Source: Raja brachyura
Lineage: Eukaryota
NCBI GenBank assembly: GCA_963514005.1
Contig: OY740803.1
Span: 20,088,001-20,152,000, forward strand
Reading direction: 5' to 3'
Length of the DNA stretch: 64,000 nucleotides
This document shows positions 2,267 to 64,000 of this stretch, piece by piece (position 1 is the stretch's first letter; each line of letters begins with the position of its first letter). Below the pieces are notes generated by a model. It was not told the DNA's origin and did no database searches. It saw only the letters and a program-made list of their open reading frames with translations. The position numbers and the translations under genes were made by a program.

Positions 2267-2964
2267 CGTAAACCTCCCAATCATGAAAACAACCACTGGA
2301 CCTGAAATGAACGAGAGCCTGACGGCTGGGACAAAGTGAAAGTGCAGCTTTCCATTTGAGCTGCAGTCTATTGAGTGTCTGCGTTTATTTGTGTATGTTT
2401 GCCTCTGTGAAGTAATTCGTTCTTCTAAATACATTTTAATAATTAAAACATTTAAAAACATTTTAACTATGCGTAAGATGGAACTGCAGATGCTGGTTTA
2501 CACCGAAGATACACAAAGTGCTGGAGTAACAGCAGGTCAAACAGCATCTCTGGAGAAAAGGGAATAGGTGAGGTTTGGGGTGGAGACCCTTCTGTGCCTG
2601 ATGAAAGGTCGCCACCCGGAACGTCACCTCCTCCTTTTCTCCAGAGATGCTGCCTGACCAGTTGGGTTACTCCAGCACTTTGTGTAAACCTTTTAACGAG
2701 ACAATTGACGCAGTCTCCCACGTCGGTTAAGGGCTACTCCGTGAAGCAGCGAATGCCTTGTTTTCCGCGCATGGGGCGGTAGTTATTGCTTGCTCCCGAA
2801 TCTCCAATACTGAAACAGAAACCGCGGGCAAGAGGGCGAAGTATTTAAATCCGTGTTTCCCACCCTGCATCGGGTTTCATGGGGAGGTGAAGTGCGATCG
2901 GTCAGGATGGATGTGGTCGGCGGGGATTAAGCGCGGCACAGGATACATCATCGGCCTGGTGACG
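2267..2964. promoter_or_regulatory. Candidate bidirectional promoter with non-coding first exons
   Basis: CpG-enriched unique sequence. IRF-type AAGTGAAAGT at ~2334, ISRE-like GAAACAGAAACC at 2812-2823, GC box at ~2774, TATTTAAA at 2842. Donor on - strand (CG|gtaact at 2266) and on + strand (CG|gttagt at 2965). Confidence 0.4.
2470..2685. mobile_element. Fold-back (inverted dimer) Penelope-LTR-derived short element with degenerate hammerhead motif
   Basis: Left arm is the reverse complement of the right arm. Core ctgatgaaaggtcgccacccggaacgtc at ~2598-2625. Confidence 0.7.
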
Positions 2965-3254
2965 GTTAGTGGCCACGTTTTTCTTTTCGCAGAAAAAGTC
3001 ACTTTGTTGTGGTTAGGATGGGGTCACGGCAGAGGCGACTGTAGCAGTTTCACAGGTGAAACTGACGCCTGTGACGGGTGGGTGTGTGTGTGTCCCTGGT
3101 GTGTGTATGTGTGTAGCCGGCTGGGGACTCCTGAATATCGCCCTGACCTCGGCTTTAGGTGAAACTGCGCCAGATCTCCACACTAGTCACAAAGTGCTGG
3201 AGGAACTCAGTGGACAGACAGTGGTTTCGGGTCAGCAAGTGAAAGTTCCCGCAA

Positions 3255-3630
3255 TGTGTAGGAAGGAACTGCAGATGCTGGTTTACGCCGAAGATAGGCA
3301 CAAAATGCTAGAGGAAGGACAGGCAGCATCTCTGGGTCGGAGGGATGGGTGACATTTCGGGTCGAGACCCTTCTTCAGACTCAAAGGGTCTCGACCCGAA
3401 ACGTAACCCATTCGTTTCTCTCCAAAGATGCTGCCTGTCCCGCTGAGTTACTCCATCCTGCATTCTGTGTCTATCTGAAGTGAAGGTTCACTTCGGTCTG
3501 AAGGAGAGTCCTGACCCGAACTCTCACCTGTCCATCCCCCCCCCCCCCCCCAGATGTTGCCTGACCCTCTGAGTTCCCCAGCACTTGGTATTTTGTTCAG
3601 GATTTCACCACCTACAGTTCTTTGTGACTT
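3255..3630. mobile_element. Cluster of Penelope-LTR-derived hammerhead-bearing short elements (inverted pair plus a third copy)
   Basis: tttcgggtcgagacccttcttcagac (- strand) immediately followed by agggtctcgacccgaaacgta (+ strand). Confidence 0.75.
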
Positions 3631-3709
3631 CAAGTGTTACTAATAAATAGTTAAGTAATAAGCTTAAGTAATAAATAGTTATTTCTGCTCTTTATTGCTG
3701 CTCTTTGCA

Positions 3710-3900: not shown

Positions 3901-4099
3901 CTTTGTTTTGCGTGCTGTCCAATCAGATCAGATAAGATCTGTATATAAATACTATAGAGCCAAACTCATGAAAAATAAGCAGAGTCAAGGGCAAGGTTGA
4001 AGGTACAGAATACAGTTTTCAGCATTGTAGAACAAGAAAGAAAGAAGGCATGAAAGGGAATCTTCACATGTCCCAAATCTTATTCAATCAAAAATAAAG

Positions 4100-4847: not shown

Positions 4848-7149
4848 TCCTTTATATAATATAGATATGATGGGATGTTGTCCAATTTGGTAGGGCAACA
4901 ATAAGAAGACAAAATGTTTTGTAATGGGAGAGACTGAAAGATATTAAGGGGGACCTAGATATCCTTGTACACTTCTCACTGAAAACATGTGTCTCTGCAA
5001 CAAGCAGTTAAGAAGGCACACAGTTTATTGGCCTTTACTGCTAAAGGATTTGTTTACAAAGATGCATCCATCAAACTGCAATTAAGCAATCGTGAAACTG
5101 CCGCTGGAATATTCTGTATAATCCTAGTCTCCCAACCCGAGGAAGGAGAGAAGAGTGTAGTGAGAGTTTAGTTTAAAGAAGCAGCATAGCAACAGGTCCT
5201 TCGGCCAACCAAATACACATCAACCATCAATCACCCATTCACCCTAGTTATTCCACTTTTTTTTCCACTTTCCCACTTTCACATTCACTCCCTACACACC
5301 AGGAGCAATTTACAGAGGCCAATTAACCTCCAAATCTGTAAGTATTTGGAATTTGGGACAGTGAGGAAGGTTTTCCAAGATGTCAACAGGACGTAGATAA
5401 ACTGGGGCAAGAAACGGCAGATAGAAATGAATTTGAACCAAAATGCAATGATTTGGACGTACCTATATATCCGTTCGTCTTTGGAATTTGGGATGAAACT
5501 GGAGCACCCCGAGGAAACTCATGCGGTCACAGGGAGAACATGCAAGCTCCGCAAAAACTGCACCCAAGTCCCTAGCGCTGTGGGGCAGCAGCTCTACCAG
5601 CTGCACCATTGTGCTGCCCCTGTTACTACAAAAGCTCAACAGATTGATTCTAGGGAGCAGGCAAAATGTGTAGGAAGGAACTGCAGATGCTGGTTTACAC
5701 CAATGATAAAAAAGCATCTGGAGAAGGGTTCCGACCCAAAGCATCACATATTCCTTTTCTCCAGAGATGCTGCCTGACCCGCTGAGTTACTCCAGCACTT
5801 TGTCTCTATCGTGGGAGAAGGGTTTTGTCGGAGAGGTTAAGTGGATTGATCCTCGAGAGAATTTGAAAGAATGAGAGATTATCTCATGAAAAACTCCCAA
5901 TCTTTTGATGTGGTGTGCAATGATAATTACAGGACACTAATGAGCTTGTGTATCCAGTGCTGACATTCAGAAATCATGGATCATGTAAAGTAGGCCAAAT
6001 GCCCCTCATACATTGAATAGAATTGGTTTGAAAGATGAAGCGTAGAAACCTGCCCTCCGGCCACCAAATCTGTGCCGAACACACTACCTCTACCCACTTT
6101 CTATGCTATCCCACTTTCACATCCAGTGCCTACACACTAGGGGCAATTTACAGAGATCAATTAACCTACAAATCATCACATCTTTGGAATGTGGGGGAAA
6201 CCGGAGCACCCGGAGGAAGCCCACACGGTCACAGGGAAAACGTACAAACTCCAGCCATGATTTGAGTCAAGATCTTTCTTTTAAAGAAGGGTCTCAACCT
6301 GAAGCGGCGCCTATCCCTTCCCTCCACAAATGCTGCCTGACCCACTGAGCTCCTCCAGCACACTGTGTTTTGCCCCAAATTCCAGCATCTGCAGTTCCAT
6401 TGTGTTTCTGTGTATTTCTTATGTTTGTCACAGAAAGAAAGTAATGGAGCTCGAGATCCTACCTTACTTCACTGAGTATTTCAATGTTCTCTTTAATTTT
6501 GAGCACTGGAGCATGTTGTGACACAGGTGTGGTATAATGGACTGTGAGGAGGGTTATCTAAGATTACAACAGATTGTAGACAAACTTGGAAACTGAGCCT
6601 AAGGAACGGCAGGTAGAATTTTATTTTAGCCAAAATACAATGATTTGGACTTGCACGTTAAACCAGGGAAGACTTAAGGCATTACCCTGGAATGCAAATG
6701 CATTGGTCCCTGAAAGTGGTGACACAAGTAGACAGTGAAAATAAAGACATGCTCTGCTTAAATTCCTCCTCTTGCTCATTACTGGACTTGTCATTTTCCC
6801 TTTTAGTTTTCAGAACTATACCGTGGCCCTCAGTTATAGTGATAGTAATTTAACACGAAATTGAGCCCTTAAGCCCAACACATCCATACTGACCAAAATG
6901 CCCCATCTAAACTAATCCCATTTTCTCACATTTAGCCCATATCCATCTAAACCTTTCCTATCCAAATACCTGTCCAAGGGCATTGATACCCTTGATACCA
7001 TTTCCTAATAAAATCCATTCATCTCAAATTTCAAATGGTTAAATTTGAAATCTTCAGAAGTTCTCCGATGAAAGAATTCTAGATTTCCTCTTTGCTTGGA
7101 CGAGAAATGTTTTTTGGCCCACGTCTCACTTTTAAGTCATGGCTTCTTG

Positions 7150-16948: not shown

Positions 16949-17713
16949 GTAAGTACCTAAAACCCAGAGGCCTGGGTTCGATCCTGACCTCGGCTGCTGT
17001 ATGTGTGGTGTTTGCAAGTTCCCCTTGTGACGGTGTGGGTTTCCTCTGGTGCTCTGGTTTCCTCCCACATCTCAAAAGACGGATATTCAGGTTAACTGGC
17101 CTCTGTAAATTGCCCATGACTTGTAGGGAGAGTAAGCGAAAGAGGGATAACATAGAACTAATATGAACATAGAACATAGAACTAAGATGAACGAGTGATT
17201 GATGGTTTGTGCAGATTTAGTGGGCCGAAAGACCTATTTCTACGCCATATTTCTAAACTAATAGAAGTTGATGGAAGTTTATGGATATGCAGGGAATGGA
17301 GGCATATTGTTCATGTGCAGGCAGATGAGGTTAGTTTATGTTGACAAGATGTTTGGCACATTTTAGTTTTTAGTTCAGAGATACAGCATACAATCAGCAT
17401 AGGCCCACCGAGCCTATGCCAACCATGATCACCCGTACACTAGTTCTATGTTATCCCACTATTGCACCCTGCATACTTAGGACAACTTACAGGCCAATTA
17501 AACTACAAACCCGCTCGTCTTTGGAATACAGGAGGAAACCAGAGAAAACTCACATGGTCACAGGGAGAACTTGCAAACTCCACACGGATAGCACCCAAGG
17601 TAAGGATCGAACCCGGGTCTTTGCCGCTGTGAGGCAGCAGCTCTACTGTTGCAGCACTGTGTTCTAAAAGGCCTGTTCCTCTGCTGTACTCATCTATGTT
17701 CTATGATTTTCAG

Positions 17714-18049: not shown

Positions 18050-18949
18050 GTGAGTAATATTGTACTTCCTCTGCTTTTCTTTCATTTAAAAAATATTGGT
18101 TAGAATTAATTATTAATAAATTGCAGCTTTCCACTTCCAAAGCACGTGTGAGTTTGGTAAACTTATGCAATGTTGAGGATTACATTCAGAAAGTATTACC
18201 ACGGCATTAAAAAAAACCCCTCTATTTTAATTTAGTGGGCAGTACAGTGGCACAGCTGTAGTTGAGCAGCTGCCTCACAGCGCCAGAGAACCGGGTTTGA
18301 TCCTGACCTCGGGTGCTGTCTCTGTGGAGTTTGCATGTTCTCCCTATGACCACGTGGGTTTCCTCCGGGTGCTCTGGTTTCCTCCCACATAACAAAGTTG
18401 TGTGGGTTGTGGGGATTAATTAGTCTCTATAAAAGAAAGCCTCCCCCTAGTGTGCAGGGAGTGGATGAATAAGTGAGATAATGTGTGGGGAGGAACTGCA
18501 GATGCTGGTTTAAACAGAAAATAAACACAAAATGCTGGAGTAACTCAGCGGGCCAGGCAGTATCTCTGGAGAGAAGGAATGGGTGACGTTTCTGGTTGAG
18601 ACCCTTATCATAGAGTGATAGTATGGAATCGGGCCCATCAGCCCACCGAGCCCATGCCAATCATGATCACCCATAAACTAGTTCTGTGTTATCCCCCTTT
18701 GCGCCCTGCACACTTTGGGCAACTTACAGAGGCCAATAAATCTACAAACCCGCACGTCTTTGGAATACAGGAGGAAACCGGAGAAAACCCACGCGGTCAC
18801 ATTGTGAGCGTGCAAACTCCATACAGATAGCACCCAAGGTGAGGATCAAACCCAGGTCTTTGCCGCTGTGAGGCAGCAGCTCTACTGTTGCACCACAGTG
18901 TTCTAAAAGGCCTGTTCCTCTGCTGTACTCATCTTTCTATGATTTTCAG

Positions 18950-19272: not shown

Positions 19273-20236
19273 GTTACTCATCCACTCCCTGGTGGATGAG
19301 GAAGTGAGTGGATGAGTAAGTGAGATCATGTGTTGGGAGGAACTGCAGATTCTGGTTTATACGGAAAATAGACACAAAATGCTGGAGTAACTCAGCGGGC
19401 CAGGCAGCATCTGTGAAGCGAAGGAATGGGTGACGTTTCGGGTCGAGACCCTTAGTCATAGAGTGATACAGTGTGGAAATGGGCCCTTCGGCCTAACTCG
19501 CCCACACCGGCCAACAGTGTCCCAGCTACTCTAGTCCCACTTGCCAGCGCTTGGTCCATATCTCTCCAAACCTGTCCTATCCATATACCTGTCTTATTGT
19601 TTCTTAAATGATGGGATAGTCCCAGCCTCAACTACCTCCTCTGGCAGCTTGTTCCATACACCCAAGATCATTTGTGTGAAAAAGTCGCTCCTCCGATTCC
19701 TATTAAATCTTTTCTCCTTCACCTTGAACCTATGTCCTCTGGTCCTTGATTCCCCTACTCTGGGCAAAAGACTCTGTGCATCTACCCAATCTATTCCTCT
19801 CATGAAGATTCAGTTTACATAGTAAATGTTGTGAGAATTGAGAAAATAGAAGGTTTTGATGGAGAAATATCAGATATTGATAAATTGTGCATCAAAGTGA
19901 CCTTTGTGGATGACAAGTAGAGAAGTCTTATTATTGATACAGAAAGTTCATCAGTTTTCTGCTATTTGAAGAGAGCAAGGAGCTGTAATCTATCCAGTCA
20001 TTTCAAATGAAAGCTAAATAAATGTGAAGGAACTGGATGATATTTGGCATTTCTGGCTTGGTGCCGTCCAATCTGCAACTCCAAAGCCCCCTTATCCTGT
20101 ATCTACCTATCACTCACCAGGATTTGTCATGCCCCCACCTCTTTTCCGGCTTTTCCCCCTCCCTCCTGCAGTCTTAAGAAGCGTCCTGACCTGAAACTCC
20201 ACCGATCCATGTCTTCCAGAGATGCTGCGTGTGTTA

Positions 20237-20462: not shown

Positions 20463-21596
20463 CAACTCCGGCACTTTATTTTTGTTTGTAAACCAGCATC
20501 TACATTTCTTTGTTTTTCCGACTTTCATAAGGTTTCATAGGCACTTATACCTTTAATGGTATATATGGACATATGGAGTTGGCAGTGATGTCCCCGAGAT
20601 AAAAGTCCAGAAATCCTAGTACTGGAAATCTGCATTGAGGATATCTGTTGAGTGTGTTATTTGGCTTGGACACTCCATTTATAGCAGCTCCTACAACTAT
20701 GATCTCTAGATTTGCAGATAAGACTGAGTAATGGAGAACTCTTAGCACATATTGTATCTCAGTTTACTTTAATCTCATGGTTCATTTGAGACCTGATCTA
20801 TCATGTAAGAAAGCAGTGGATTTAATCTGTGTAGTGAGTCCTATCAATGCAAGCCGTTGTATAAAGAAAGCTGGGAAAACAATATTTGTAATGCTGCATC
20901 GAATAAAAATGAACTGCAGATCCTGGTTAGACACAAAATGCTGGAGTAACTCAGCGGGTCAGGCAGCATATCTGGAGATTTTTTTTTTAGTTTTGTTTAC
21001 AGCCCACCATGACCGAGCTCCATCTAATGTCTTTTGAATGCATCCAGTGAGTTGGCCTCCACTGGCTTTTGAGGTAGAGAATTCCACAAATTCACAACTC
21101 TCTGGGTGAAAAAGAGTTTCCTCATCTCGGTTCTAAATGGCCTTCCCCGTATTCTTAAACAGTGGCCCCTGATTCTGGACTCCCCCAACATCGGGAGCAT
21201 GTTTCCTGCATCTAACGTGTCCAATCCCTTAATAATTTATTTAAATTTTTATAAGACACCCATTCGTCCTTCTAAAGTCCAGTGCATACAAGCCCAGTTG
21301 TTCCATTCTTTCATCATATGACAGTCCCGCATTCCCGCCTCAACCTACACTGCACTCCCTCAACAATAAGAATGTACATCATCAAGTTAGGAGACCAAAC
21401 CTGCACACAATACTCCAAGTGTGGTCTCATCAAGGCACTGTACAACTGCATAAGGACCTATTTGTTCTTATACTCAAATTATCTCGTTATGAAGGCCAAC
21501 ATGCCATTAGCTTTCTTCATTGGTTGTTGTAGCTGCATGCCTACTTTCAGTGACTGATGTACAAGAACACCCAGGTCTCGTTGCACTTCTCCTTTT

Positions 21597-21930
21597 CCCA
21601 ATCTGACTTTTCTGTCCTGGGCCTCCTCCATTGTCAGAGTGAGGCCCAGCGAAAATTGGAGGAGCAGCACCTCATATTTCGCTTCGGTAGTTTACACGCC
21701 AGTGGTATGAACATTGCTTCTCTAACTTCAGTTAGCCCTTGCTTTCCCTATCCATCCCCTTCACCTTCCGTTCAACCACCAGTCTTAGTGTATCTGCCTA
21801 CATTCTATATTTGCCCCGCCCCCTCCAGTGACATCAGTCCGAAGAAGGGTCTCGACCCGAAACGTCGCCCATTCCTTCGCTCCTGAGATGCTGCCTCACC
21901 CGCTGAGTTACTCCAGCATTTTTGGGTCTA
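21597..21930 (+). mobile_element. Penelope 3' fragment (GIY-YIG C-terminus plus LTR with hammerhead-like motif) inserted in CR1
   Basis: RKLEEQHLIFRFGSL matches 58030-58090; ccgaagaagggtctcgacccgaaacgtc at ~21839. Confidence 0.8.
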
Positions 21931-22270
21931 CCATTCAAATAATAATCTGCCTTCTTGTTCTTGCCACCAAATTGGATAACCTCATATTTATCCACATTAT
22001 ACTGCATCTGCCATGCATCTGCCCACTCATCCAACCTATCGAATTCACCCTGCATCCTCATTGCATCATCTTCACAGTTCACCCTGCCACCCAGCATTGT
22101 GTCATCTGCAACTTTGCTAATGTTACTTTTAATTCCTTCAACTAAATCAATAATATTTATTGTGAATAGCTGCACTCCCAGTATCGAGCCTTGTGACACC
22201 CTGCCAATCACTACCTGTCATTCTGAAAGGGAACCGTTAATCCCTACTCTTTGTTCCTGTCTGACAATCA

Positions 22271-30017: not shown

Positions 30018-30119
30018 TGAAGCCTGAAGAAAGGTCTCGACCGGAAATATCACCTATTCCTTTTCTCCAGATGTGCTGTCTGACCCACTGAGTTACTCCA
30101 GCTTTTTGTGTCTATCCCC
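30018..30119 (+). mobile_element. Short hammerhead-motif Penelope-derived insertion with 9-bp TSD
   Basis: aagatccct at 30009-30017 and 30120-30128; core ctgaagaaaggtctcgaccggaaatatc. Confidence 0.75.
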
Positions 30120-35769: not shown

Positions 35770-36780
35770 TTGGTTTAATATCATTATTTATACTGAGATA
35801 CACTGAGATGCCATCCAGTCAAATCATACCACACAGGAATAGTCACGTCATATACAAGTACAGTCGTTAGTATAAGGAGAATACAGCAGAATGCAGAATA
35901 TAGTATACAGTTATAGTGTTACAGTTATAGACAAAGTGCAGGTAAAAAAAACAAACAGGTTCTGCAATGAGGTAAGTTGGAAGATGGAGTCACATCCTAG
36001 CACATGGGGGGGACTATTCAGTTGTCTGATAACAGTGGGGAAGAAGCTATGTCTGAATCTGATGCAATGTGTTTTTAAGCATTTGCATCTTCTGCTCGAG
36101 CGATTGATCAGTGGGAAAATGCTGTTTGATAATATTGGCTGCATTCCTGAGGCAGTGTGAAGTGTAAATGGAATTGATGGTGTGAGGCTAGCTTGTGTGA
36201 TGAACTAGGACCCATCCACATTTCTCTGCAATTTCCTGTGGACTTGGGCAGAGCTGTCGCCAAACCAACTTGTGATACATCCCAGCGGATAGGCACAAAA
36301 TGCTGGAGTAACTCAGCGGGTCAGGCAGCATCTCTGGAGAGAAGGAATAGGTGACATTTCAGGTCCAGACCCTTCTTCAGACTAAGAGTCGGGGGAGAGG
36401 GAAATTAGAGCTATGAAAAGGTTCAGAAACTTTATAACACATCCCGATAGGATGATGAGGTATCCGCAAATGTTGGCAAGAGTAGTTAGAGAATGCCAAA
36501 CTTCCTTAGTCTTTTGGGAATGTTGGTGTGCATTATTGGCCCCAGCTTTAACATGGTTGGACCAGGACTTGTTGGTGATATTTACAGTACACCTTGGGAC
36601 TGAAGGTCTCCAGCATCTTCACTTCAGCACCATTGATGCTGACTAAGGCATGTACGCCACCTCATTTCCTGGTCAATAACTTGCTCCTTCACCTTGGTGA
36701 TGCCGAGAGTTGTTGTCTTGTCCCCATTTTAATAATCTCTGTCTCCTCTCTGTACTCTGGCACATCATGGTTCGCGATCA
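35770..36780 (-). mobile_element. Degenerate Rex1-like LINE interrupted by a Penelope-derived hammerhead repeat (~36290-36430)
   Basis: RFRHSFFPTVIRQLN motif. Confidence 0.6.
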
Positions 36781-41800: not shown

Positions 41801-41937
41801 CAGTCTGAAGAAGGGTCTCGACCCGAAACATCACCCATTCCTTCTCTCCAGAGATGCTGCGTGCCCCGCTGAGTTACTCCAGCTTTTTGTGTCTATCTTC
41901 GATTTAAACCAGCATCTGCAGTTCTTTCTTACACAGT
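41801..41937 (+). mobile_element. 137-bp hammerhead-bearing Penelope-derived element with 11-bp TSD
   Basis: catgctacatt at 41790-41800 and 41938-41948; begins cagtCTGAAGAagggtctcgacccGAAAcATCacc. Confidence 0.85.
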
Positions 41938-43268
41938 CATGCTACATTTTGGCAGGCAGTGGCTAAAAGTACAAAAATAAGGTTATGTAACAAATATTTC
42001 AACAGCCACTGCACTGAGAGGGAAGTGAGAGTAACAGCGGATGAAGGTTCAAGCATTGGAAACAGGGAATAGAACCCGTGAGCTCAGATATTTTACACCA
42101 TTGTGACAAAGGTATAAGTAGCCCTGTGTTTTCAACCCTACAATGTGACTAAGGAGGTTCCAAACTAATAATGTTATCCCGAGGTTAATTAAACTGTGGT
42201 CTGTGGAGGAAAATGACAGACAACCTTTCAGGTTGGGACCCTTGTTAAGTCAGAAAAAGAGTCCTGTCCCAAGATGTCATCTGTCCATTACTTCCACAGA
42301 CATTGCATGGCCTTTTGAATTATTTCATCAATATGTGCTTTGCCCACTATTCCAGCATCTGCAGTTCCTTATGCCTGCATCGCCATAGACATATTTGTTC
42401 AGTCAGTCATTACTTGGGGTGTTGATCTATCCAAAGATCTATCCTTCACAATATTATGGCAACAGAAGGATCTTTCCGATGTTGGCATCTGCCCTCAGAA
42501 GGTTTATGAATGTTGACATGATCTACAGTAGGTAACTTGCCTCAACAAAGGCATTTGAATATTCAAATTTAATACTGTCATTTGCAGTGATGGAAATGGG
42601 TTTTAGGAACTAGGGGCACTCTAAGGTACATGAGGCTGAGGTTGGGAAGGAAGGGGGGGGGGGGTGGGGGTTATGTGTGGTCATACCCATGCAAGAGTAC
42701 AAGAATGCATAACTTGTTTATTGTGTACTTATAATATAGTTTATAGTGTATTATATGTCATAGCTGTTTTCTGGCATCTCTTTCTCTCTCTGTTTACATT
42801 ACAAAATGTTGCATAATGGTATATAATCTCAATTTTTTTCTGTCATCCTCTTTCTATCTGCGTGCCGTTTCTTCCGCACGGCTTCTGCCACGAAGAAGCC
42901 ATGTCCTCGCATATTCTTCGGGGTTGAATTTTGACAGAGGAGTTCCCACCAACTTAATAAATAGAAGAGTTGAGAGATGATCAGTTTGAAGTCTTGCATG
43001 TTGTGGTCACATGCAGAAATTTATGCCACTGATGCTTCTTTCACAATCTGCTGTTGATACCGGAATTGTATTTACAGCTGTGAGCAGCTGTTGAAAATCT
43101 ACAGACACTGTCTTCCCTTGATTCTTTGAATTCTCTGAAGGCTCTGACACAAAGCCGACCATTTTAGCCAATTTGTTCTGCCATTTCTTCTACATCATTA
43201 TCCCCAAAGGTAAAAAATGAATCTTCTGGAATATTGTTAATATCTAAACATTTCGACTTGTTAATTAA

Positions 43269-52451: not shown

Positions 52452-53356
52452 TATATAGTAAAAATTGATAGTGATATAATAAAATATTTCCATTTGCACT
52501 ATTGTTTTGCTAAATAAAACCACCCACAATGAAATATTCACCACTCACGATTTAGGCTGGAAAAAACTATTGGTACTACTTATTTAATTTTCTCCCCATC
52601 CATTCTAATTTAACTGAACACTTAATCTGAAAATGCAGTTTCTTATTGGGGCAGATAATAGAAAAAGTAATGCCTTTGGAGACAGCGGCTGATTGGAGGG
52701 GAGGAGACCGATTTGTTGATTGGACGGGAATTTTAAGGGAAGATCGTCGGTGATTGGACGCAACCTCCTTGGAGACAGCGGTTGATTGGCTGCCAAATAA
52801 TCGGGAACAAAAAATTGACAAATAGGAAAACAAAAATCGTAATTACGATTTAAATCTGATGTAAGGTACATAGGGTGGGTATCGATTAATTCTAGACAAC
52901 AGATTTAAAAAAAATCTAACCCCATTAGATCACTCAGGGTGTATTTTGATATGTTCTACAGTATGAAGTGTACAGCAAAACTTGCACTTCCAGAGTGGTC
53001 TATTGTGTTGTTTCTTCAGCAGACCATAAATTTATTTTAAGAGCTAAACATAAAGTGCTGAAGACTCATCAGGTCAGGCCGGATATATGGACGGTCCAAA
53101 GAAGGGTCTCGACCCAAAACATCACCTATTCGTTCTCTCCAAAGATGCTGCCTGACCTGCTGAGTTACTCCAGCATTTTGTATCTATCTATGGAGGGAAT
53201 GGTTAGGCGACATTTAGGTGTTGGTAAAGATCGAAAATTTCACATATTTAAATATGTTGTTACGAAAATAACTACTAGTGTGGGAAATGTTTGCCACATA
53301 CATACCCAAAAGTAGAAATGTAGAAAGTTACAGTGCATAAAAAACATAGATATTAC

Positions 53357-53568
53357 GAGGGTACACAAAAAGCTGGAGAAACTCAGCGGGTGCAACAGCA
53401 TCTAAGGAGCGAAGGAGATAGGCAACGTTTCGGGCCGAAACCCTTCTTCAGACTGATGGGAGGTGGGGGAGGGGGGGGGGGGGAGAAGAAAGGAAAAAGG
53501 AGGAGGAGGAGCCCGAGGGCTGAGGGAGATGTGGGAAGGGGAGGAGACAGCAAGGGTTAACAGAAATT
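53357..53568 (-). mobile_element. Solo Penelope pseudo-LTR
   Basis: Near-identical inverted copy of 58110-58320. Confidence 0.85.
53421..53453 (-). ncRNA. Minimal type I hammerhead ribozyme motif (best-preserved copy)
   Basis: Reverse complement gtCTGAAGAagggtttcggcccGAAAcGTTgcc: CUGAnGA, stem II, GAAA, palindromic AACGUU stem III, GUH triplet. Confidence 0.7.
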
Positions 53569-55386: not shown

Positions 55387-58320
55387 TCGAAACACCGAAA
55401 CACTGAAAGGTCGGTCCTTAGCAGAGGTCTTACCTTTATCCCCCTCCGTCCCCACCTCAATGGGTTCCGCGCCCACCACGACTTGGATCTCTTCTACCAT
55501 CGCCTCCGCAAAGCGGACCGAACTGCGCCGCCCCACCAACCACCCACCCACCGGGACCACCCACGCATCGCCCGCCGACCCCGACTCTACGGCCCGCGGA
55601 CTCCCACCTTCGGGCCCGTCAACCCACGACACTCCACTGCCCTCCAGCAGCCCGCAGCCGTCGCCTCACCTGCAAACTGGACTCTGCAGCGGGCCGGAAG
55701 CCTCCATGCTGTTGATTCCCACTCCTCTGGTTTTGACGGCACTGGGTCCTAGTGCCCGTCTCCCCAACCCTGGTAACCTCAGTCGCTATTCCACTGGGTC
55801 TTCCCCATCCCCCTCCAACTATGTAACCCCTGCTCTTCCCCACCCACACCACAGCCCCCATACCCCCCCACCCCCTGACCACCCTCCACCCCCCCACCAC
55901 ACAACGCTTCGTCCTCAGTCCACTCACCTGCCTGCCTCCGGCCACAACCCCCATCCTTGCCACGTGTTCATCATCCCCCCGGACCTCCCCCTCTCCGACA
56001 CCGAAAGGTCGGTCCTCAGCAGAGGTCTTACCTTTGTCCCCCTCTGTCACCACCTCAATGAGTTCCGCGCCCACCACGACTTGGAGCTCTTCTACCGTCG
56101 CCTCCGCCTCACAGCGTTCTACCACGGGAAGAAGTCCTTGCCCCCCACTGATGATCCCTTTTCCTGTCTCCAACGAACCCCTTCCTCGTGGACCCCTCCT
56201 CGTGGCCCTCCAGCTTTAGAACTCTTTATCCAGAACTGCCGTCGGGACATCAACCGCCTCGACTTCTCCACTCCCCTGTCTCACTCCAATCTCTCCCCCC
56301 TCGAACGTAATGCCATCGACTCACTCCGCAACAACCCAGACTGGGTTATCAAACCCGCCGATAAGGGAGGTGCGCATCGATCTCTACAAAGCGGAGGCCA
56401 CGCGCCAACTCTCGGACACCTCCTCCTACTTACCCCTGGACCATGACCCCACTGACGAGCACCAGGCCACCATCTCGAGCACCATAACCAACTTCATCAA
56501 CTCCGACTCCCTGCACCCCCGAGCCTCCAACCTCATCGTTTCCCAGCCCCGCACGGCCCGATTTTACCTTCTCCCCAAAACCTGACTGCCCCGGCAGACC
56601 CATTGTCTCTGCCTGTTCGTGCCCCATCTAACTCATTTCCACTTACCTTGACTCCATCCTATCCCCCTTGGTTAAATCCCTCCCCACCTATGTTCAAGAC
56701 ACCTCAGACACTCTCCGTTGGCTCCACGCATTCCATTCTCCAGGCCCCCATCCTCTCATCTTCACCATGGACGTTCAGTCACTCTACACCTCCATCATCC
56801 ACCAGGATGGTCTCAAAGCCCTCCGGTTATTCCTCGACCAGAGGAGCAACCCATACCCGTCCACTGACACCCTCCTCCGCCTAGCGGAGTTGGTCCTTAC
56901 CCTCAATAACTTCTCTTTGACTCCTCCCATTTCCTCCAAATACAAGGCGTGGCTATGGGCACACGCATGGGCCCCAGCTATGCTTGCCTCTTTGTCGGGT
57001 ACGTCGAACAATCCATGTTCTCGGCGTACCAGGGCCCCATCCCCGACCTCTACCTCCGTTACATCGACGACTGCTTTGGTGTCACCTCCTGCACCCACAC
57101 ACAACTGACTGACTGATCCGTTTCACCACCAACTTCCATCCGGCACTCAAATACACCTGGACCATTTCCGACACTTCCCTACCATTCCTTGACCTCATGT
57201 TCTCCATTGCAGGGGATACAATCCTGACCGACATCCACTACAAACCCACTGACTCCCACAGCTACCTGGACTACTCTTCCTCCCACCCTGCTTCCTGAAA
57301 GGACTCTATCCCCTATTCCCAATTCCTCCGTCTATGCCGTATCTGCTCCCAGGATGAGGTGTTCCACACCAGGTCATCACTAATGTCCTCATTCTTCAGA
57401 GAACGGGGATTCCCCTCCCCCACTATAGATGAGGCTTGCACCAAGGTCTCCTCCATACCCCGCAACACTGCCCTCTCTCCCCATTCCCCACTCGCAACAA
57501 GGACAGAGTTCCCCCTGGTCCTCACCTTTCACCCCACCAGCCGGCACATACAACACATAGTCCTCCGCCAGTTTCGCCACCTCCAATGTGACCCCACCAC
57601 TTGCCACTTCCCATCTCCCCCCCGTCTGCCTTCCGCAAAGACCGCTCCCTCCGCAACTCCCTTGTCAATTCTGCCCTTCCCTCCCGCTCCACCTTTCCCC
57701 CGGGCACTTTCCCTTGCAACCGCAAGAGATGCTACACTTGTCCCTTTACCTCTCCCCTCCACTCCTTTCAGGGACCCAAGCAGTCCTTCCAGGTCCGACA
57801 GAGGTTCACCTGCTCCTCCTCCAACCTCATCTACTGCATCCGCTGCTCTTGATGCCAGCTGATCTATATCGGTGAGACCAAGCGGAGGCTGGGCGATCGT
57901 TTCGCCGAACACCTCCGCTCGGTCTGCAATAACCAACCCGACCTCCCGGTGGCTCAACACTTCAACTCCCCCTCCCATTCCGTATCCGACCTCTCTGTCC
58001 TGGGCCTCCTCCACGGCCAGATTGAGCAACACCACAAATTGGAGGAACAGCACCTCATATTCCGCTTGGGGAGTCTGCATCCTTTTGGCTTGAACATTGA
58101 ATTTTCTCAATTCTGTTAACCCTTGCTGTCTCCTCCCCTTCCTACCTCTCCCTCAGCCCTTGGGCTCCTCCTCCTCCTTTTTCCTTTCTTCTCACCGCCC
58201 CCCACCCCCCCCACCTCCCATCAGTCTGAAGAAGGGTTTCGGGGCGAAACATTGCCTATCTCCTTCGCTTCTTAGATGCTGCTGCACCCGCTGAGTTTCT
58301 CCAGCTTTTTGTGTACCCTC
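55387..58320 (+). mobile_element. Penelope-like element (Neptune-like), RT plus GIY-YIG endonuclease, disrupted, inserted into an HE1-like SINE
   Basis: IKPADKGG, TMDVQSLYT, GVAMG, LRYIDD, CNRKRCYTC linker, LIYCIRCS..YIGETKRRLGDRFAEH; 3' pLTR with hammerhead at 58224-58256; TSD aatattagctt at 55376-55386 and 58321-58331. Confidence 0.92.
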
Positions 58321-58674
58321 AATATTAGCTTGCTTTCTCATCCACTCCCTACATACTAGGGGCAGCTTATGGAGGCTGATTAACTACAAACCTGCTGGTC
58401 TTGTGGGATGTGGGAAGAATCCTGAACACCCGGAGGAAAGCCACACTGTCACAAGCAAACTCCGCACAGACAGCACCCGAGGTGAGTATTGAACCCGCAT
58501 CTCTGTGAGGCAGCAGCCATACCCACTGCACCACTATGCAGTCACTTGTCTGCAAGTGGTTGAGATAAGTCGACAATGTTAGTTGATGTCGACAACTTAA
58601 CAAATGGAACTTTGGAAGAAAACTAAAATAAAAATTGGAAAAGAAATGACCACCAGAAAACATTAGGGTGGTGG

Positions 58675-58965: not shown

Positions 58966-59289
58966 CTTTAAATTCTGAACATTACTCGGGGAATTAATGC
59001 AGAGAGTGTAGTAAAGAGGAGTCCAGGATAGGACAGGAAATTGTGTAATTTGATGGTTTGCAGATGGTTCCTGAGTAGCAGATTAGATTCATGTAATATA
59101 GTCTCTGCAATAATAGTCCCCTGATTGGGAATAAAAAAGAGAAATATAGACACAAAATGGATACATGGATAGGACAGGTTTGGAGGAATTTGGACCAAAC
59201 TCGGGCAGGTGGGACTAGTGTAGCTGGGTCATGTTGGCCGGTGTGGGCAAGTTGGGCCGAAGGGCCTGTTTCCACACTGTATCACTCTA

Positions 59290-59572
59290 AAATACTGGAG
59301 TAACTTCGTGGTTCAAGCAGCATATGTGGAGAAAAGGAATAAGTGAAGTTTCGGGTCGAGACCCTTCTTCAAACTTGGGGTCTGAAAAATGGGGATTAGA
59401 CTTTTAAGTGAAGAAGGGTCTTAACCCGAAACGCCACCCATTCCTTTTCCCCAGCGATGGCGCCTGACCCGCTGAGTTACTCCAGCATGTTGTGTCTATT
59501 TCACTATTTTTTATTGTTCCTTCTCTGTGATATTTCATTCCAGTGTAAACCGGCATTACAGTTCCTTCCTGT
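59290..59572. mobile_element. Fold-back dimer of hammerhead-bearing Penelope-derived repeat
   Basis: - strand core at ~59343-59372 and + strand core at ~59409-59438, with inverted arms. Confidence 0.75.
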
Positions 59573-59985: not shown

Positions 59986-62204
59986 GTAAGTTTGTCTTCG
60001 TGTTTCTTTATCCCAGCCTTGTCCACACTCCGGGACCGACCCGAAAATTACCTATTCCTTCTGTCCAGAGATGCTGCCCAGGCAGCTGAGCTACTCCAGT
60101 ACGTTATGTCTTTATTTGTAACCCCGCAGTTCCTTAGACAGACAGAAAAAACTGGAGTCACTCAGCGGGACAGGCAGCGTCTCTGGAGAGAAGGAATGGG
60201 CGACGTTTCGGGTCGAGATCGTTCTTCTACTCTCCGCAGTTCTTTGATATTTTCCCCCCTTTAACAGCCATTGCAACGATGGGTTGATTATTGGTTCAAC
60301 TCTTTAGTCTTTCTTAGATTGGGTGTAATTCAGACTTTTGAATGTAACTAAACTGACCTGACCTGACCTGACAGACACATTGCAGATTTCTCCCTGTGTC
60401 TGTGTGCATGTGTCTGTGTTTGTCCCCTTCTGTATGGGGTAGACTGACCCCCCACCCTCCCAAATCTTTGCACATCCCCAATCCTTTCCACTCGTCACTT
60501 AAATTTCATGTTTCATGTATTTTACGTTTTTATGACTGTTGGAAGATTAATTTCCCTCCTGGGATAAAAAAAGTTCTATCGTATAGTAGGTGTGAGATAA
60601 GGATAAAAGGAATGCAGATTGTGAAGCCAGAGCAAGGAATATAGGTTGAAGGGGATTGTTTTTTGTACAGTTTGCTGGAATGGGCATATTGTCATATTGG
60701 CTAAGGTGAGGCAGGTGAGGTTTGGATGCGCTGGAGTTGAGAGGATGAGTGAGAGGGGACTGAACGGTTTCATATCCTGCGGTGTTTGTTGGATGGATAT
60801 AGCGAGCAAACATGATAGGGAGGACAGTTCCAAATCTGGAACGAGGTGTAATAGGTCACAAATTAGGAGTTAATATATTAAAGCAGAAATGAGGTGAAAT
60901 TTTGTTCACCCAGAGACTGCGAGCCTTTAGAAGCCTCTTCATCAACAGGCGGTAAAAGTAGAGACATCGGATATGTTTTAAGGTAGAGTTGGATAGTTTC
61001 TCGACAACAAAATAAAGGAATAAAGGGTTACCAGGGGGTAGGCGGGATTTGGTAGATAATGTTACAACCATACCTTTGCATTGAATGACAGAACAGGCTC
61101 GAAAGGCCAAATGCTTTGCCCCTTCTTCTGAATTGCATGTTCAAATTTACATTTTGAACTCAAACGGCCTGGAATCAAGACACAAACTGCTGGAGTAACT
61201 CATCAGGTTAGAGAACATGGTCCTGACCCGAAACGTCACCTAGCCACGTTCTCCACGGATGCTGCCTGACCTGCTGAGTTACTCCAGCACTCTGTGTTAT
61301 TTGTTATAAACCCAACATCTGTAGTCCCTTGTTTTCACTGCCTGTAATTACTGTACATTGTTGTTGCTGTCGTTTTTGTTCTTGGTGTTGCGGTGCTCTC
61401 TTTGTTGGAATTCATAACTTGTTCTCGAATCATTCCATGATCTCTAGTCAATAAAGTTGCAATGTGTCTGCTAATCTGGGCTTGGCATCTGGGCTTGGCA
61501 GTGTCTTCCACACAGGTAATAGAAGTATAAACATGCTGTATGAATAGTGGTTCATATTTGAGGTTCCCTTTTCCTCTTTGCTGTCATCTTTCTCGCTTCC
61601 TCATACAAACTCGTACCTCTTTTTAAGCGAGTACGTCAAACAGGACAAACCAATACTTGTTGCTCACTGTTGTATGTGTCGATGCTGAAACTCTTATGGG
61701 ACGTCCTAACAGTCTTTGAATCATTTCTTCTATCCACACGTGACGGTCTGCCATCAGTCAGTTCTCAGCCTACGATGCAGAGGATGTTTCCACTAGTGGG
61801 AGAGTGTAGGACCAGAGTGCACAGTCTCAGAATAAAAGGACGTACCTATAGACTGTAAATGAGGTGGAATTTCTATAGTCATGGGTGGTGAATCTGTGGA
61901 AATCATTGCCACAGACGGCTGTTTTAGGCCAAGTCAATGGATATTTTTAAAGCAGGGATTGAAGGTCAAAGGTTAGAGGGAGAAGGCAGGATGATGGTGT
62001 TGAGAGGGAAAACTAGATCACTCATGATCAAATGGCGGAGCAAGCTCGATGGGTCGAATGACCTAATTCTTGTCCTATGTCTTATGGTCATGGACCAGAA
62101 CTGTAAGGTGCAGAGAAACCTGGAAAACCTGGAAAAAGTTCTATGTTACTTAAATGGAGCTTTCCTGATCGCTCACGTTGCTTGTCCATCGGGTGTCCAA
62201 GCTA

Positions 62205-63115
62205 TAGTTTAGTGTAGTCTAGAGATACAGTGCCGAAACAGGCCCTTCAGCCCACTGAGTCCGCACCGACTAGGCACCGAGTAGCGATCCCCGCACACTT
62301 ACACTATCCTACACACACTGGGGGCAATTTACTTTTATACCCACAATAATAACATCATAATCATAATCATAATTGTAATTTACATAATTGTAAGTGTGTT
62401 TTGCAACATACGAGGAATTTGATTACATAAAAATGGCATAAACATCCACTGCAGAGGCTCCTCCACACTCCCCACTGTGATTGAAGGCAATAAAGTCTTA
62501 TCTTCTTTCCTCCCGCGGTCGGGAGAGTCCAACCATCCGCAGCCGGTGATCGAGCTCCCTCGTCTGGGCGAACTAAGCTCCTGCATCGGGGCGGTCGAAC
62601 TCCTGTGGCTTGGAGTTCCCAAAATCGGTCCAGTGACAGCGAGCTTCACGATGTTACAGTCTGCAGCTCCCGCAGGTTGAAGCATCAAAGGCTAGCCCCT
62701 GGCAAAAGGTACGCCCGCTCCGAGATGTTAAAGTCCGCAGGCTCTGCGGTTTTGGAACTCTAGAAGTTCCAATCAAGAGGCTGCCAACTCCACAATGTTA
62801 GGCCGCAGTGCAAACGGAGATACGACGCGGGGAAAGTCGCATCTCTGTCGATGAAAGAGATAAGAATAGTTTCCCCCACCCCCCCCCACAAAACTAAAGA
62901 TAAACTAAAACATCCATTTCACAACAAACTAAAAACACAAAGACAGACCGTTGGCGAGGCAGCCATCGTGCACCAATTAACCTACAAACCTGTACGTATT
63001 TGGAGTGTGGGAGGAAAACGAAGATCTCGGAGAAAACCCACGTGGTCACGGGGCAAACGTACGAAATCTGGCACTGCAAGAGCTGTATGGCAGCTACTCC
63101 ACCGCTGTGCCACCC
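62205..63115 (-). mobile_element. HE1-like SINE split by a non-autonomous retroposon (62345-62972, (atcata)n tail)
   Basis: The SINE halves join across the insert. Confidence 0.75.
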
Positions 63116-64000
63116 AATAGACGGTCAGGAAAGTGTGGCGCTCAATCCTGAAATAGGTATCCTGATGGAAAACCATGGAATTACACACACTATCTAAAAT
63201 GAATCTGTTTTCAGTAATTACCCTGATCTTCCATTGAAGGTGCTGAGGGAGACACATGGAACTGCAGATGGTGTAATCTTGAGCAAAACACAAAGTGACG
63301 GAGGAACCCAGTGGGTCAGGCAGCATCTGTGGAGGGAATAGGCAAATTGCATTTCGGGGCTGGAGACGTCTTCAGTCGCAACCTTTCCTCCACAGATGCT
63401 GCCTGAAATGCTAAGATCTTCCTGCACTTTGTGTTTTGCTCTGAGAGACTGGGAAATCCCCAAGAAAATTTACTAACGTGATATGAGGGCTTGATATGAG
63501 GATTTGGAACAAATAAGTTGGCCAGGTACTCTCATTATCTTGAAAATTCAGTAACAACAGAAGTTGAGGAACTATGAAGTCATTAAGACAGGTCACAGAC
63601 TTTTGGATTTCTCTCCCTGATAATTGGAGGAAAACACCAAATAGAATTATTTGTTTTAATTATAGCACTTAATTCTGATGAGCCAAATCAAATGTCACAA
63701 AGATAGACACTGAGTGCTGGAGTAACTCAACATGTCAGGCACCATCCCTGGAGAAAAAGGATGGGTGATGTTTTTGGATTGTGGCCCTTCTACAGAATGT
63801 CACAAAAGTCACAAATATGATTTATTGTTTAAGGTTCTAGTTATATGAAACTCCTGACAAAACCTAACATGATATATCAGCAATGTAAACCAATGTTTCT
63901 TTCGATTTAGTACACAGTACAACACTGGAACAGGCCCTTCGACCCACAAACATCCGTGCTAACTAAGATGGTAAGTTAAAGCTAATCTCCTCTGCCTGCA

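What the first reader, a model, noticed from the sequence alone, without database searches (positions are those of the whole stretch)
2470..63800. Window-wide family of short mobile elements carrying minimal hammerhead ribozyme motifs
Seen: about 20 copies, many degenerate, of CTGAAGA-agggtctcgaccc-GAAAC-GTC/GTT/ATC followed by a conserved ~100-bp body (gatgctgcctgacccgctgagttactccagca). Positions include ~2600, 3350, 3385, 5720, 6285, 18585, 19430, 21840, 30024, 36351, 38722, 41803, 53095, 53421, 58224, 59343, 59409, 60199, 61220 and 63766. The same motif ends the autonomous-type Penelope element. Established: Penelope pLTRs carry minimal hammerheads with palindromic stem III that are thought to cleave as dimers. 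Inference: a very abundant non-autonomous retrozyme/SINE-like family mobilised by Penelope RT/GIY-YIG, roughly one copy per 3 kb, including inside host introns.
Basis: partly seen in the sequence, partly recalled or inferred. Interest (0 to 1): 0.8.

Follow-up and report, generated by a model that had tools for sequence, protein, structure and literature searches.

The report
Penelope retrotransposon tails with hammerhead motifs
The window is littered with about 25 short (95-140 bp) leftover 3' ends of Penelope-like retrotransposons that carry a decayed minimal hammerhead-ribozyme motif; this is a real but already described by-product of how these elements copy themselves, not a new kind of ribozyme element.

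Summary
All 20 listed positions are real copies. A profile search finds 35 hits at about 25 loci on both strands, far above chance.

The family consensus carries the published "minimal hammerhead" of Penelope-like elements (PLEs):
- CUGAAGA, then one extra A, then a G-C-closed helix II;
- GAAA, then a palindromic ACGU with no helix III loop, then H17.

Only 1 of 27 aligned copies keeps every box. Stem II shows no covariation, and Rfam finds nothing.

One copy sits about 120 nt after the ORF of a frameshifted PLE at about 55.4-58.3 kb. Full-length homologues of that ORF have RVT_1 plus a C-terminal GIY-YIG domain.

The short copies have these features:
- target-site duplications of 9-11 bp in three cases;
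- two 3' ends, about 40 bp apart;
- 5' ends piled up at the hammerhead's 5' edge;
- eight head-to-head inverted pairs, against 0.25 expected by chance.

Apart from the pile-up of 5' ends, which the papers read do not describe, these features match the published anatomy of PLE insertions. Nothing supports a retrozyme (no tandem arrays) or a SINE (no pol III head). No RNA evidence could be obtained.

The scan has already noted the same family on other pieces of this genome. Verdict: an ordinary new member of a known kind; low interest.

The parts
55392..58325 (+). Frameshifted Penelope-like element (RT, CX4CX2C linker, GIY-YIG start), 3' UTR with pyrimidine tract, min-HHR at 58226-58253, short-type 3' end
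   Evidence: Its pieces map to aa 206-332, 439-529 and 758-834 of P0026 (919 aa; RVT_1 + GIY-YIG). HHR found. Contig depth rises from 5' to 3'.
53350..53565 (-). 216-bp 5'-truncated copy of the same PLE subfamily; the only copy in the window with every hammerhead box intact (CUGA box at 53451)
   Evidence: 93.5% identical to 58111-58325. Passes the integrity check and the strict descriptor.
41801..41937 (+). Discrete 137-bp short copy (HHR + body + 40-nt tail extension) with an 11-bp TSD, CATGCTACATT
63702..63795 (-). 94-bp short copy with short-type 3' end and an 11-bp TSD
30018..30119 (+). 102-bp short copy with short-type 3' end and a 9-bp TSD
21589..21950 (+). Longer 5'-truncated PLE 3' fragment (about 350 bp) reaching into the endonuclease region, with an A-type tail
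   Evidence: Aligns to PLE 57972-58314 at 71.6%. Its tail is 85-88% identical to the short copies.
38622..38752 (-). Short copy with tail extension, inserted in the RT ORF of a LINE; same subfamily as the PLE
   Evidence: 95% identical to the tail at 53454. LINE domains. Sequence.
2480..2702 (.). Head-to-head inverted pair (2480-2593 minus, long tail; 2596-2702 plus); candidate 7-bp TSD TTTTAAC abuts both ends
3265..3481 (.). Head-to-head inverted pair (3265-3381 minus, long tail; 3384-3481 plus, short tail)
3496..3621 (+). Divergent-subfamily copy directly downstream of the previous pair; the only direct neighbour arrangement in the window
3178..3221 (-). Partial tail fragment
5677..5816 (.). 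Head-to-head pair; the minus arm (5677-5725) is only the tail extension, the plus arm (5717-5816) starts at the HHR
6282..6398 (+). Short copy with long tail and a decayed core
18492..18608 (-). Copy lacking the CUGA box, abutting a LINE 3' end; duplicate of the 19.4-kb copy
19339..19458 (-). Copy lacking the CUGA box, abutting a LINE 3' end; duplicate of the 18.6-kb copy
20170..20231 (+). Copy with pyrimidine-rich upstream sequence; interrupted
20465..20508 (+). Weak tail-extension hit (model positions 75-123, E 0.0078) about 230 bp after the interrupted 20170 copy
20911..20978 (-). 5'-truncated tail fragment
36286..36401 (-). Copy extending about 20 nt upstream of the HHR into the pyrimidine tract
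42200..42368 (.). Old, diverged head-to-head pair
53039..53194 (.). Head-to-head pair; the minus arm is partial (model 44-100), the plus arm is full
59289..59503 (.). Head-to-head pair with a 34-nt spacer; the outer end of the minus arm abuts a LINE 3' end
60034..60227 (.). Tail-to-tail pair (60034-60133 plus; 60131-60227 minus)
61171..61328 (.). Head-to-head pair; the minus arm is partial (model 59-100), the plus arm has the long tail
63258..63444 (.). Head-to-head pair; the minus arm has the long tail, the plus arm is partial (model 38-101)
1312..1554 (-). 243-bp internal PLE fragment (linker/endonuclease region), with no tail attached
   Evidence: 93.8% identical to 57607-57848

Best explanation
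The repeats are 3'-terminal pieces of Penelope-like retrotransposons, Neptune-type by their linker motif. Each piece is the element's minimal hammerhead motif plus the conserved 70-110 nt that follow it.

The inferred mechanism is as follows. The PLE RT/GIY-YIG protein nicks the target and starts reverse transcription at one of two sites in the conserved tail, which gives the short and the +40-nt 3' ends. It copies only as far as the 5' edge of the hammerhead. The cDNA is then joined to the target, often with a 9-11 bp duplication.

When both DNA strands are nicked and extended ('twin priming'), two tails are copied towards each other. This leaves a head-to-head inverted pair.

In the active master elements the hammerhead is part of the 3' UTR / pseudo-LTR. 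It presumably processes multimeric PLE RNA as a dimer through its ACGU palindrome.

In the genomic short copies the motif is a passenger. It decays neutrally, fastest at its three CpGs, and is intact in only about 1 of 27 copies.
For: Shown by the sequence or by tools:
- 35 hits, far above chance.
- The consensus has CUGAAGA, an extra A (25/27 copies), G10.1-C11.1, GAAA and palindromic ACGU + H. These are the features listed for PLE min-HHRs in PMC4209133.
- The motif lies about 120 nt after the ORF of a PLE whose homologues are 813-927 aa RVT_1 + GIY-YIG proteins.
- A short copy is 95% identical to a PLE-linked tail, and a 350-bp PLE fragment carries the abundant tail type.
- TSDs of 11, 11 and 9 bp flank three short copies.
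- 3' ends cluster at model positions 98-103 and 123-124. 26 of 35 hits start at model positions 1-10.
- 8 head-to-head pairs against 0.25 expected. Four of five partial arms keep a canonical tail end and lack the HHR-proximal part, as twin priming predicts.
- Contig depth rises 5' to 3' along the PLE.

From the literature:
- High 5' truncation, an adjacent inverted truncated copy and a one-sided 30-40 bp tail are standard for PLEs (PMC8557442).
- A PLE protein cleaves and extends both strands, initiates reverse transcription internally, and does not need hammerhead cleavage in vitro (PMC11167929).
Against: - 5' ends are not spread out as in ordinary truncation. About 80% lie within about 10 nt of the CUGA box, which simple RT fall-off does not explain and which leaves room for a discrete short template RNA.
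- TSDs for the inverted pairs are only 7 bp in 2 of the 9 paired loci tested (8 head-to-head, 1 tail-to-tail), near the chance level for the search space. Single-event origin of the pairs therefore rests on geometry alone.
- Partner arms are not each other's nearest relatives.
- Helix I is only 2 bp, plus 2 bp beyond an internal loop.
- No covariation, no Rfam match and no RNA data. Ribozyme activity is inferred only from motif and context.
Confidence: 0.7

Rival explanations
1. The 95-137-nt unit is a dedicated non-autonomous element. A discrete short RNA starts at the hammerhead's 5' edge, for example from an initiator-like TCAGTCT in the pseudo-LTR. It ends in the tail that the PLE RT recognises, so it parasitises the PLE machinery like a SINE without a pol III head.
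For: - Sharp pile-up of 5' ends: 26 of 35 hits start at model positions 1-10, and the TSD-delimited copies start 0-5 nt before CUGA.
- In pairs, at least one arm always reaches that edge.
- Long copies conserve a pyrimidine tract followed by YAGUCUG just upstream.
- Contig loose ends from other runs lose agreement upstream of TCAGTCTG.
- About 20 short copies against 5 longer ones in the window.
Against: - No pol III head.
- In this window, short copies are not a lineage apart from PLE-attached tails.
- The initiator reading rests on a 7-nt match.
- 5' ends scatter over about 10-15 nt.
- The same short RNA could simply be the start of an ordinary pseudo-LTR-driven PLE transcript copied from its first tail. 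In that case the copies are a by-product rather than a separate element.
Confidence: 0.22
2. It is a non-LTR retrozyme: units flanked by hammerheads are transcribed, self-cleave at two sites, circularise, and are copied back by a rolling-circle route.
For: - A hammerhead-type motif is present.
- A 2026 preprint relates vertebrate retrozymes to PLE pseudo-LTRs.
- There is one direct neighbour arrangement at 3384-3621.
Against: - No head-to-tail arrays.
- The one direct neighbour pair joins different subfamilies.
- Units are 95-137 bp against 150-450 bp for retrozymes.
- The hammerhead is the minimal type, without loop 1-loop 2 contacts.
- No copies start at the predicted cleavage site (model position 32).
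- Only 1-2 motifs are intact.
Confidence: 0.03
3. The motif no longer works as a ribozyme even in master copies. The conserved hairpin-GAAAC-body is kept as an RT binding and initiation module, and the hammerhead resemblance is vestigial.
For: - The body after the motif is as conserved as the catalytic boxes (0.81-0.86 against 0.76-0.91).
- Helix I is 2 bp.
- Copies lacking the CUGA box occur (18.6/19.4 kb).
- In vitro insertion of a PLE does not need cleavage and no RNA ends were seen at its cut site (PMC11167929).
- PLE clades without hammerheads proliferate well (PMC8557442).
Against: - The family consensus keeps every invariant core nucleotide, the extra nucleotide, G10.1-C11.1 and the ACGU palindrome. 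This is unexpected without selection in the masters.
- Related PLE hammerheads cleave as dimers in vitro, though slowly.
Confidence: 0.25

Closest known systems
Minimal hammerhead ribozymes of Penelope-like elements (Cervera & de la Pena 2014, PMC4209133; Lunse, Weinberg & Breaker, RNA Biol 14:1499, cited in PMC6765202)
   Same: [quoted passage not shown]
   Different: Helix I is shorter here (2 bp + internal loop + 2 bp, against 4-5 bp). Helix II is 4-5 bp rather than 7-8 bp. The host appears to be a cartilaginous fish, which was not in the 2014 survey. Density is high, about one locus per 2.6 kb in this window.
Canonical PLE insertion anatomy (Craig, Yushenova, Rodriguez & Arkhipova 2021, PMC8557442)
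   Same: Strong 5' truncation, an inverted 5'-truncated copy adjacent at the 5' side, a 30-40 bp 'tail' extension present at only one end, and a hammerhead in the pseudo-LTR or 3' end.
   Different: Here truncation is extreme and focused at one point, the hammerhead's 5' edge. Most insertions are therefore 95-137 bp, with no coding sequence and no direct pseudo-LTR.
PAc (Poseidon of Anolis) in vitro system (PMC11167929)
   Same: The hammerhead is followed within about 100-170 nt by the site where reverse transcription starts. Both target strands are cut and extended. Cleavage by the hammerhead is not needed for insertion.
   Different: In PAc the ORF starts inside the hammerhead (AUG in CUGAUGA). 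Here the box is CUGAAGA, with no AUG, and it lies after the ORF.
Metazoan non-LTR retrozymes (Cervera & de la Pena 2020, PMC7229834; Li, Clavereau & Pollet 2026 preprint)
   Same: Non-coding, hammerhead-bearing, PLE-related, and abundant in non-mammalian vertebrates.
   Different: Retrozymes are head-to-tail arrays of 150-450 bp units with canonical type I hammerheads, expressed as circular RNAs. None of this is seen here.
L1 twin priming
   Same: Two cDNAs primed from the two nicked target strands meet head-to-head, and each keeps its 3' end.
   Different: A different enzyme family (GIY-YIG/PLE RT), and the arms are only about 50-130 bp.

Membership tests
PLE minimal hammerhead (min-HHR) | CUGANGA and GAAA boxes flanking a helix II hairpin | tested here: met
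   Present in the consensus of 27 copies. Intact in 8/27 (CUGANGA) and 19/27 (GAAA), with four stem II pairs in 15/27.
PLE minimal hammerhead (min-HHR) | One unpaired nucleotide between A9 and 10.1, and a G10.1-C11.1 pair | tested here: met
   Extra A in 25/27 copies. The closing pair is GC in 17 and GU in 4 of 27.
PLE minimal hammerhead (min-HHR) | No helix III loop; palindromic 15.2-16.2, then U16.1 and H17 | tested here: met
   The consensus is GAAA-CG-U-C. Intact in 9/27 copies; most losses are CpG transitions.
PLE minimal hammerhead (min-HHR) | Helix I of about 4-5 bp | tested here: inconclusive
   Only two contiguous pairs (65% of cells paired), then a 2x2 internal loop and two more pairs in long copies. 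Short copies lack the outer pairs.
PLE minimal hammerhead (min-HHR) | Compensatory changes in the helices across family members | tested here: not met
   No pair in helices I or II has changes on both sides. Pairing equals the shuffle expectation. The copies are too closely related for this to be informative.
PLE minimal hammerhead (min-HHR) | Self-cleavage, as a dimer | not testable with these tools
   No RNA reads were obtainable. MFE folding does not return the hammerhead fold.
Canonical hammerhead families of Rfam | Match to a hammerhead covariance model | tested here: not met
   No match at gathering score over the whole window. No hammerhead match even at E <= 10 on the intact copy.
Penelope-like element (autonomous copy at 55.4-58.3 kb) | RT followed by a C-terminal GIY-YIG endonuclease | tested here: met
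   The RT piece finds 1381 relatives. Six relatives of 816-927 aa were scanned: all have a C-terminal GIY-YIG and five also RVT_1. The window's pieces align to aa 206-332, 439-529 and 758-834 of P0026, the last reaching the start of GIY-YIG. Pfam itself does not score the broken pieces.
Penelope-like element (insertion anatomy) | 5'-truncated copies, an adjacent inverted copy, a one-sided 30-40 bp tail | tested here: met
   compared with PMC8557442.
Penelope-like element (insertion anatomy) | Direct pseudo-LTRs from a partial tandem | tested here: not met
   No HHR-tail copy lies upstream of the PLE on the same strand. The DNA at 54.1-54.7 kb is single-copy.
Non-LTR retrozyme | Head-to-tail arrays of 150-450 bp units, each with a canonical type I hammerhead | tested here: not met
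   One direct neighbour pair only, of different subfamilies. All other multiples are inverted.
Non-LTR retrozyme | Unit-length linear and circular RNAs | not testable with these tools
   The only raw-read run offered was an unrelated organism. The other runs are contigs and probably DNA.
SINE | Pol III promoter head derived from tRNA, 5S or 7SL | tested here: not met
   No tRNA-like sequence. No 5S, 7SL or tRNA family match in the window.
SINE | 3' end shared with the autonomous partner | tested here: met
   Short copy 38622-38752 is 92-95% identical to the PLE-linked tails.

The most novel reading that the evidence does not exclude
The 95-137-nt hammerhead-headed unit is not random truncation. 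It is a discrete RNA that starts at the hammerhead's 5' edge, either at a pseudo-LTR start site matching an initiator or at a processing site beside the pyrimidine-tract-YAG. It is the preferred template of the PLE RT. That would make it the smallest known PLE-dependent mobile unit. If this window's density is typical, it is present at 10^5-10^6 copies, making this one of the most hammerhead-rich genomes known.
Probability: 0.22. Interest if true: 0.45.

Novelty: new member of a known kind. Interest (0 to 1): 0.22.

Why it matters
This instance adds a cartilaginous-fish-type genome to the hosts known to carry minimal hammerheads on Penelope-like elements. The density is very high, about 4% of this window.

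Two small points could help work on the still poorly understood PLE insertion mechanism:
- The 5' ends pile up at the hammerhead's edge.
- The inverted pairs keep both tail ends, which argues for priming on both target strands rather than snap-back synthesis.

For annotation, these units should be masked as PLE fragments. They should not be called ribozyme genes, SINEs or retrozymes.

Tried and rejected
- Rfam at gathering score and at E <= 10 gave no hammerhead match. This is expected for a motif without helix III.
- Covariation counting on 27 copies gave nothing above the controls.
- I tested whether partner arms of inverted pairs are each other's closest relatives. They are not, so this says nothing about single-event origin.
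- TSD search for the pairs found only 7-mers, near chance.
- My first TSD guess for the 21.8-kb copy was wrong. That copy extends 250 bp further into the PLE.
- MFE and co-fold of the intact copy did not return the hammerhead fold, which is not informative.
- Pfam on the broken ORF pieces gave nothing. The PLE was identified through homologues instead.
- An exact-match scan of metagenome contigs for a 23-nt core found 0 loci.
- Read laying: the raw-read run X21 gave only low-complexity reads and is an unrelated organism. The 'RNA?' runs are contigs and probably DNA. There is therefore no evidence on transcription or RNA ends.
I could not fetch an intact PLE with both pseudo-LTRs.
- I rejected a snap-back origin of the inverted pairs (partial arms lack the centre, not the tail), cleaved RNA as template (no copies start after GUC), and a type III topology with cleavage at the 5' edge (no room for helix I).

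Full report

Yes. An exact search for CTGAAGA-N8-20-GAAAC finds 3 sites against 0.16 expected. That count understates the family.

An nhmmer profile, seeded on the copy at 41.8 kb and iterated once, finds 35 hits at about 25 loci on both strands.
- The 19-nt core AAGGGTCTCGACCCGAAAC occurs 16 times with up to 3 mismatches, against 0.01 expected.
- The 31-nt body motif occurs 12 times, against 0 expected.

The copies at 18.6 and 19.4 kb are not independent. They lie in a local duplication that is 87% identical over 202 bp, flanks included.

**2. What the motif is**

The consensus of 27 aligned copies reads, in hammerhead numbering:
- helix I 5' strand: AGU;
- C3-A9: CUGAAGA;
- one extra A;
- helix II: GGGU-CUCG-ACCC, closed by G10.1-C11.1;
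- G12-A14: GAA;
- A15.1-C15.2-G16.2-U16.1, the palindrome ACGU with no helix III loop;
- C17, then ACC.

These are the features that Cervera and de la Pena list for the minimal hammerheads of Penelope-like elements. [quoted passage not shown] The authors propose that the palindrome lets two motifs build helix III as a dimer (PMC4209133; see also PMC6765202).

Helix I is weaker than in their descriptor. It has two contiguous pairs, then a 2x2 internal loop and two more pairs in long copies.

Individual copies are decayed:
- 8 of 27 keep CUGANGA;
- 19 of 27 keep GAAA;
- 9 of 27 keep CGUH;
- 15 of 27 keep four stem II pairs;
- one copy keeps everything (CUGA box at 53451, minus strand).

A strict descriptor finds 2 sites, against 0 in 200 shuffles.

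Three CpGs lie inside the motif, and many of the losses look like CpG transitions. Match to consensus is 0.76 for CUGANGA, 0.91 for GAAA and 0.84 for the tail core. The catalytic boxes therefore show no excess conservation. On dead copies this says nothing about the master elements.

Stem II shows no compensatory change, and pairing is no better than in shuffles. Rfam has no match, even at E <= 10 on the intact copy. The ribozyme assignment thus rests on the motif and on its context.

**3. The autonomous partner**

One copy (HHR at 58226) ends a frameshifted coding element at about 55.4-58.3 kb. Pfam does not score its broken pieces.

The 146-aa RT piece finds 1381 relatives. Six relatives of 816-927 aa were scanned: all carry a C-terminal GIY-YIG domain and five also RVT_1. 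This is the architecture of endonuclease-containing PLEs.

Window pieces align to aa 206-332 (KPADKGG region), 439-529 and 758-834 of P0026. The last piece contains PCNRKRCYTCP. This is a CX4CX2C linker of the kind PMC8557442 gives as the mark of the Neptune/Nematis clades. I did not build a tree.

The ORF would end about 120 nt before the hammerhead. Between them lies a pyrimidine-rich tract ending in CAUCAG-UCUGAAGA.

I searched the pieces separately and built no mended ORF.

**4. Anatomy of the short copies**

*3' ends.* These fall into two classes, at model positions 98-103 (14 hits) and at 123-124, the end of the profile (15 hits). In the sequence, the long-class copies run about 10-15 nt beyond the profile's end. 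The difference between the classes is an extension of about 40 nt that contains CCAGCATCTGCAGTTCC. It occurs 11 times, in all but one weak case (20490, 3 mismatches) directly after a tail. This matches the '30-40 bp tail, often at only one end of the insertion' of PLEs (PMC8557442). In the pairs it is indeed one-sided.

*5' ends.* 26 of 35 hits start at model positions 1-10, which is the hammerhead's 5' edge. Only five copies continue upstream: two of the PLE subfamily, the 350-bp fragment at 21.6-21.9 kb, and the copies at 36.4 and 20.2 kb.

*Target-site duplications.* Three single copies are delimited by exact duplications:
- 41801-41937 (137 bp; TSD 11 bp);
- 63702-63795 (94 bp; TSD 11 bp);
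- 30018-30119 (102 bp; TSD 9 bp).

My own estimate of the chance expectation, from the size of the search space, is at most about 0.01 each. These copies start 0-5 nt before CUGA. None starts at the predicted cleavage product (model position 32).

*Inverted pairs.* Eight loci are head-to-head pairs with 5' ends -8 to +35 bp apart. Random placement gives 0.25. In every pair at least one arm reaches the hammerhead edge. Four of five partial arms keep a canonical tail end and lack the hammerhead-proximal part. This is what two cDNAs primed on opposite target strands would give. It is the reverse of what snap-back synthesis would give.

Candidate TSDs for the pairs are only 7 bp, in 2 of the 9 paired loci tested (8 head-to-head, 1 tail-to-tail). 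That is near chance for the space searched, although at 2468/2690 the repeat abuts both ends exactly. Partner arms are no more alike than random copies.

**5. Relation of short copies to PLEs**

The short copy inserted in a LINE (38622-38752) is 95% and 92% identical to the two PLE-linked tails. The 350-bp PLE fragment carries a tail that is 85-88% identical to the abundant short type, the same range as among the short copies themselves. In this window, then, the short copies are not a lineage apart.

No tRNA-like head exists, and there is no 5S or 7SL match. The only direct neighbour arrangement (3384-3481 with 3496-3621) joins different subfamilies. These results rule out a SINE in the strict sense and a retrozyme as defined in PMC7229834.

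**6. Reads**

The single read-laying run gave no RNA evidence.
- The raw-read run X21 laid only low-complexity reads and belongs to an unrelated organism.
- The other three runs are contig sets, and the 'RNA?' ones are probably DNA.

The contig runs do show three things:
- Single-copy depth at 54.1-54.7 kb. The 216-bp inverted copy at 53.35-53.57 kb is therefore a separate insertion from the PLE.
- Summed depth rising from 5' to 3' along the PLE.
- Depth over the abundant tail type about 2x10^5 times that of the single-copy flank.

The tool warns that this ratio is not a copy number, so I use it only as a sign of very high abundance. Loose ends agree on TCAGTCTG and lose agreement upstream of it. 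They split between ends near 53181-53185 and continuation into the extension.

**7. Most likely mechanism**

This section is inference built on sections 1-6 and on published biochemistry. A PLE protein has been shown in vitro to cut and extend both target strands. It starts reverse transcription at an internal site some 100-170 nt after the hammerhead, and it does not need hammerhead cleavage (PMC11167929).

I therefore read the short units as cDNAs primed in the tail and ending at the hammerhead's edge. Inverted pairs arise when both strands prime.

Why the 5' ends pile up there is not settled. My preferred idea is that pseudo-LTR-driven transcripts start there; TCAGTCT fits an initiator, from my own knowledge. 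On this idea the RT copies from the first tail it meets, so each transcript can yield a 'strong-stop'-like mini-insertion. In D. virilis, an intron end maps to the same edge of helix I. The pyrimidine tract plus YAG here could be read in the same way. Both readings rest on short motifs.

**8. Comparison, novelty, verdict**

Minimal hammerheads on PLEs are published, as is their mass occurrence as dispersed single motifs on truncated copies and the tandem/inverted/tail anatomy (PMC4209133, PMC8557442, PMC6765202). A 2026 preprint ties vertebrate retrozymes to PLE pseudo-LTRs.

The scan's own notes show the same family on several other pieces of this genome. Two follow-ups reached 'ordinary by-product' verdicts.

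This is a new member of a known kind. The only mildly new points are the focused 5' end and the evidence for twin priming. Interest is low.

Noticed in passing
window 38004-40710 (-): A LINE with an AP-endonuclease (Exo_endo_phos_2) and RVT_1. Its RT ORF is interrupted at 38622-38752 by a short PLE copy. About 120 bp of LINE coding sequence seems to be missing at the insertion, and there is no TSD.
   Followed up: partly
window 18609-18654, 19459-19760 and 59162-59289: LINE 3' ends (...CCACACTGTATCACTCTATGA) abut PLE short copies directly. At one site, now present twice through a local duplication, the LINE end meets the copy's 5' end on the same strand and replaces the CUGA box. At another site it meets a tail end in the opposite orientation. 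This could be RT template switching onto LINE RNA, or a target preference for the LINE's terminal repeat.
   Followed up: partly
window 17719-18057 (+): An ORF with an immunoglobulin V-set domain (E 1e-8), probably a host exon. A nearby duplication of about 200 bp (18456-18654 against 19303-19504, 87% identical) carries a PLE copy with it.
   Followed up: partly
window 1312-1554 (-): A 243-bp internal PLE fragment (linker/endonuclease region, 94% identical to 57607-57848) with no 3' tail. It ends abruptly at PLE position 57848, which is unusual for a target-primed copy.
   Followed up: no
window 55400-55509 and 55998-56107: A 110-bp direct duplication (92.7% identical) inside the N-terminal part of the PLE, separated by a proline-rich low-complexity ORF stretch. 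It may be a partial tandem or a slippage product.
   Followed up: no
window 47070-47867 (-), 48175-48843 (-): A second reverse transcriptase ORF (RVT_1, E 4e-17) in a region that another note of this scan calls a DIRS1-type element.
   Followed up: no
window 58160-58225 and 53452-53520 (-): A long pyrimidine / poly-C tract ending in CAUCAG lies immediately before the hammerhead in long copies. It looks like a 3' splice acceptor and overlaps an initiator-like TCAGTCT. In D. virilis Penelope an intron ends at the same edge of helix I (PMC4209133).
   Followed up: partly
window 54840-55207: An unrelated high-copy repeat (contig depth about 2-3x10^5, also at 17268-17360) lies between single-copy DNA and the PLE.
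   Followed up: no
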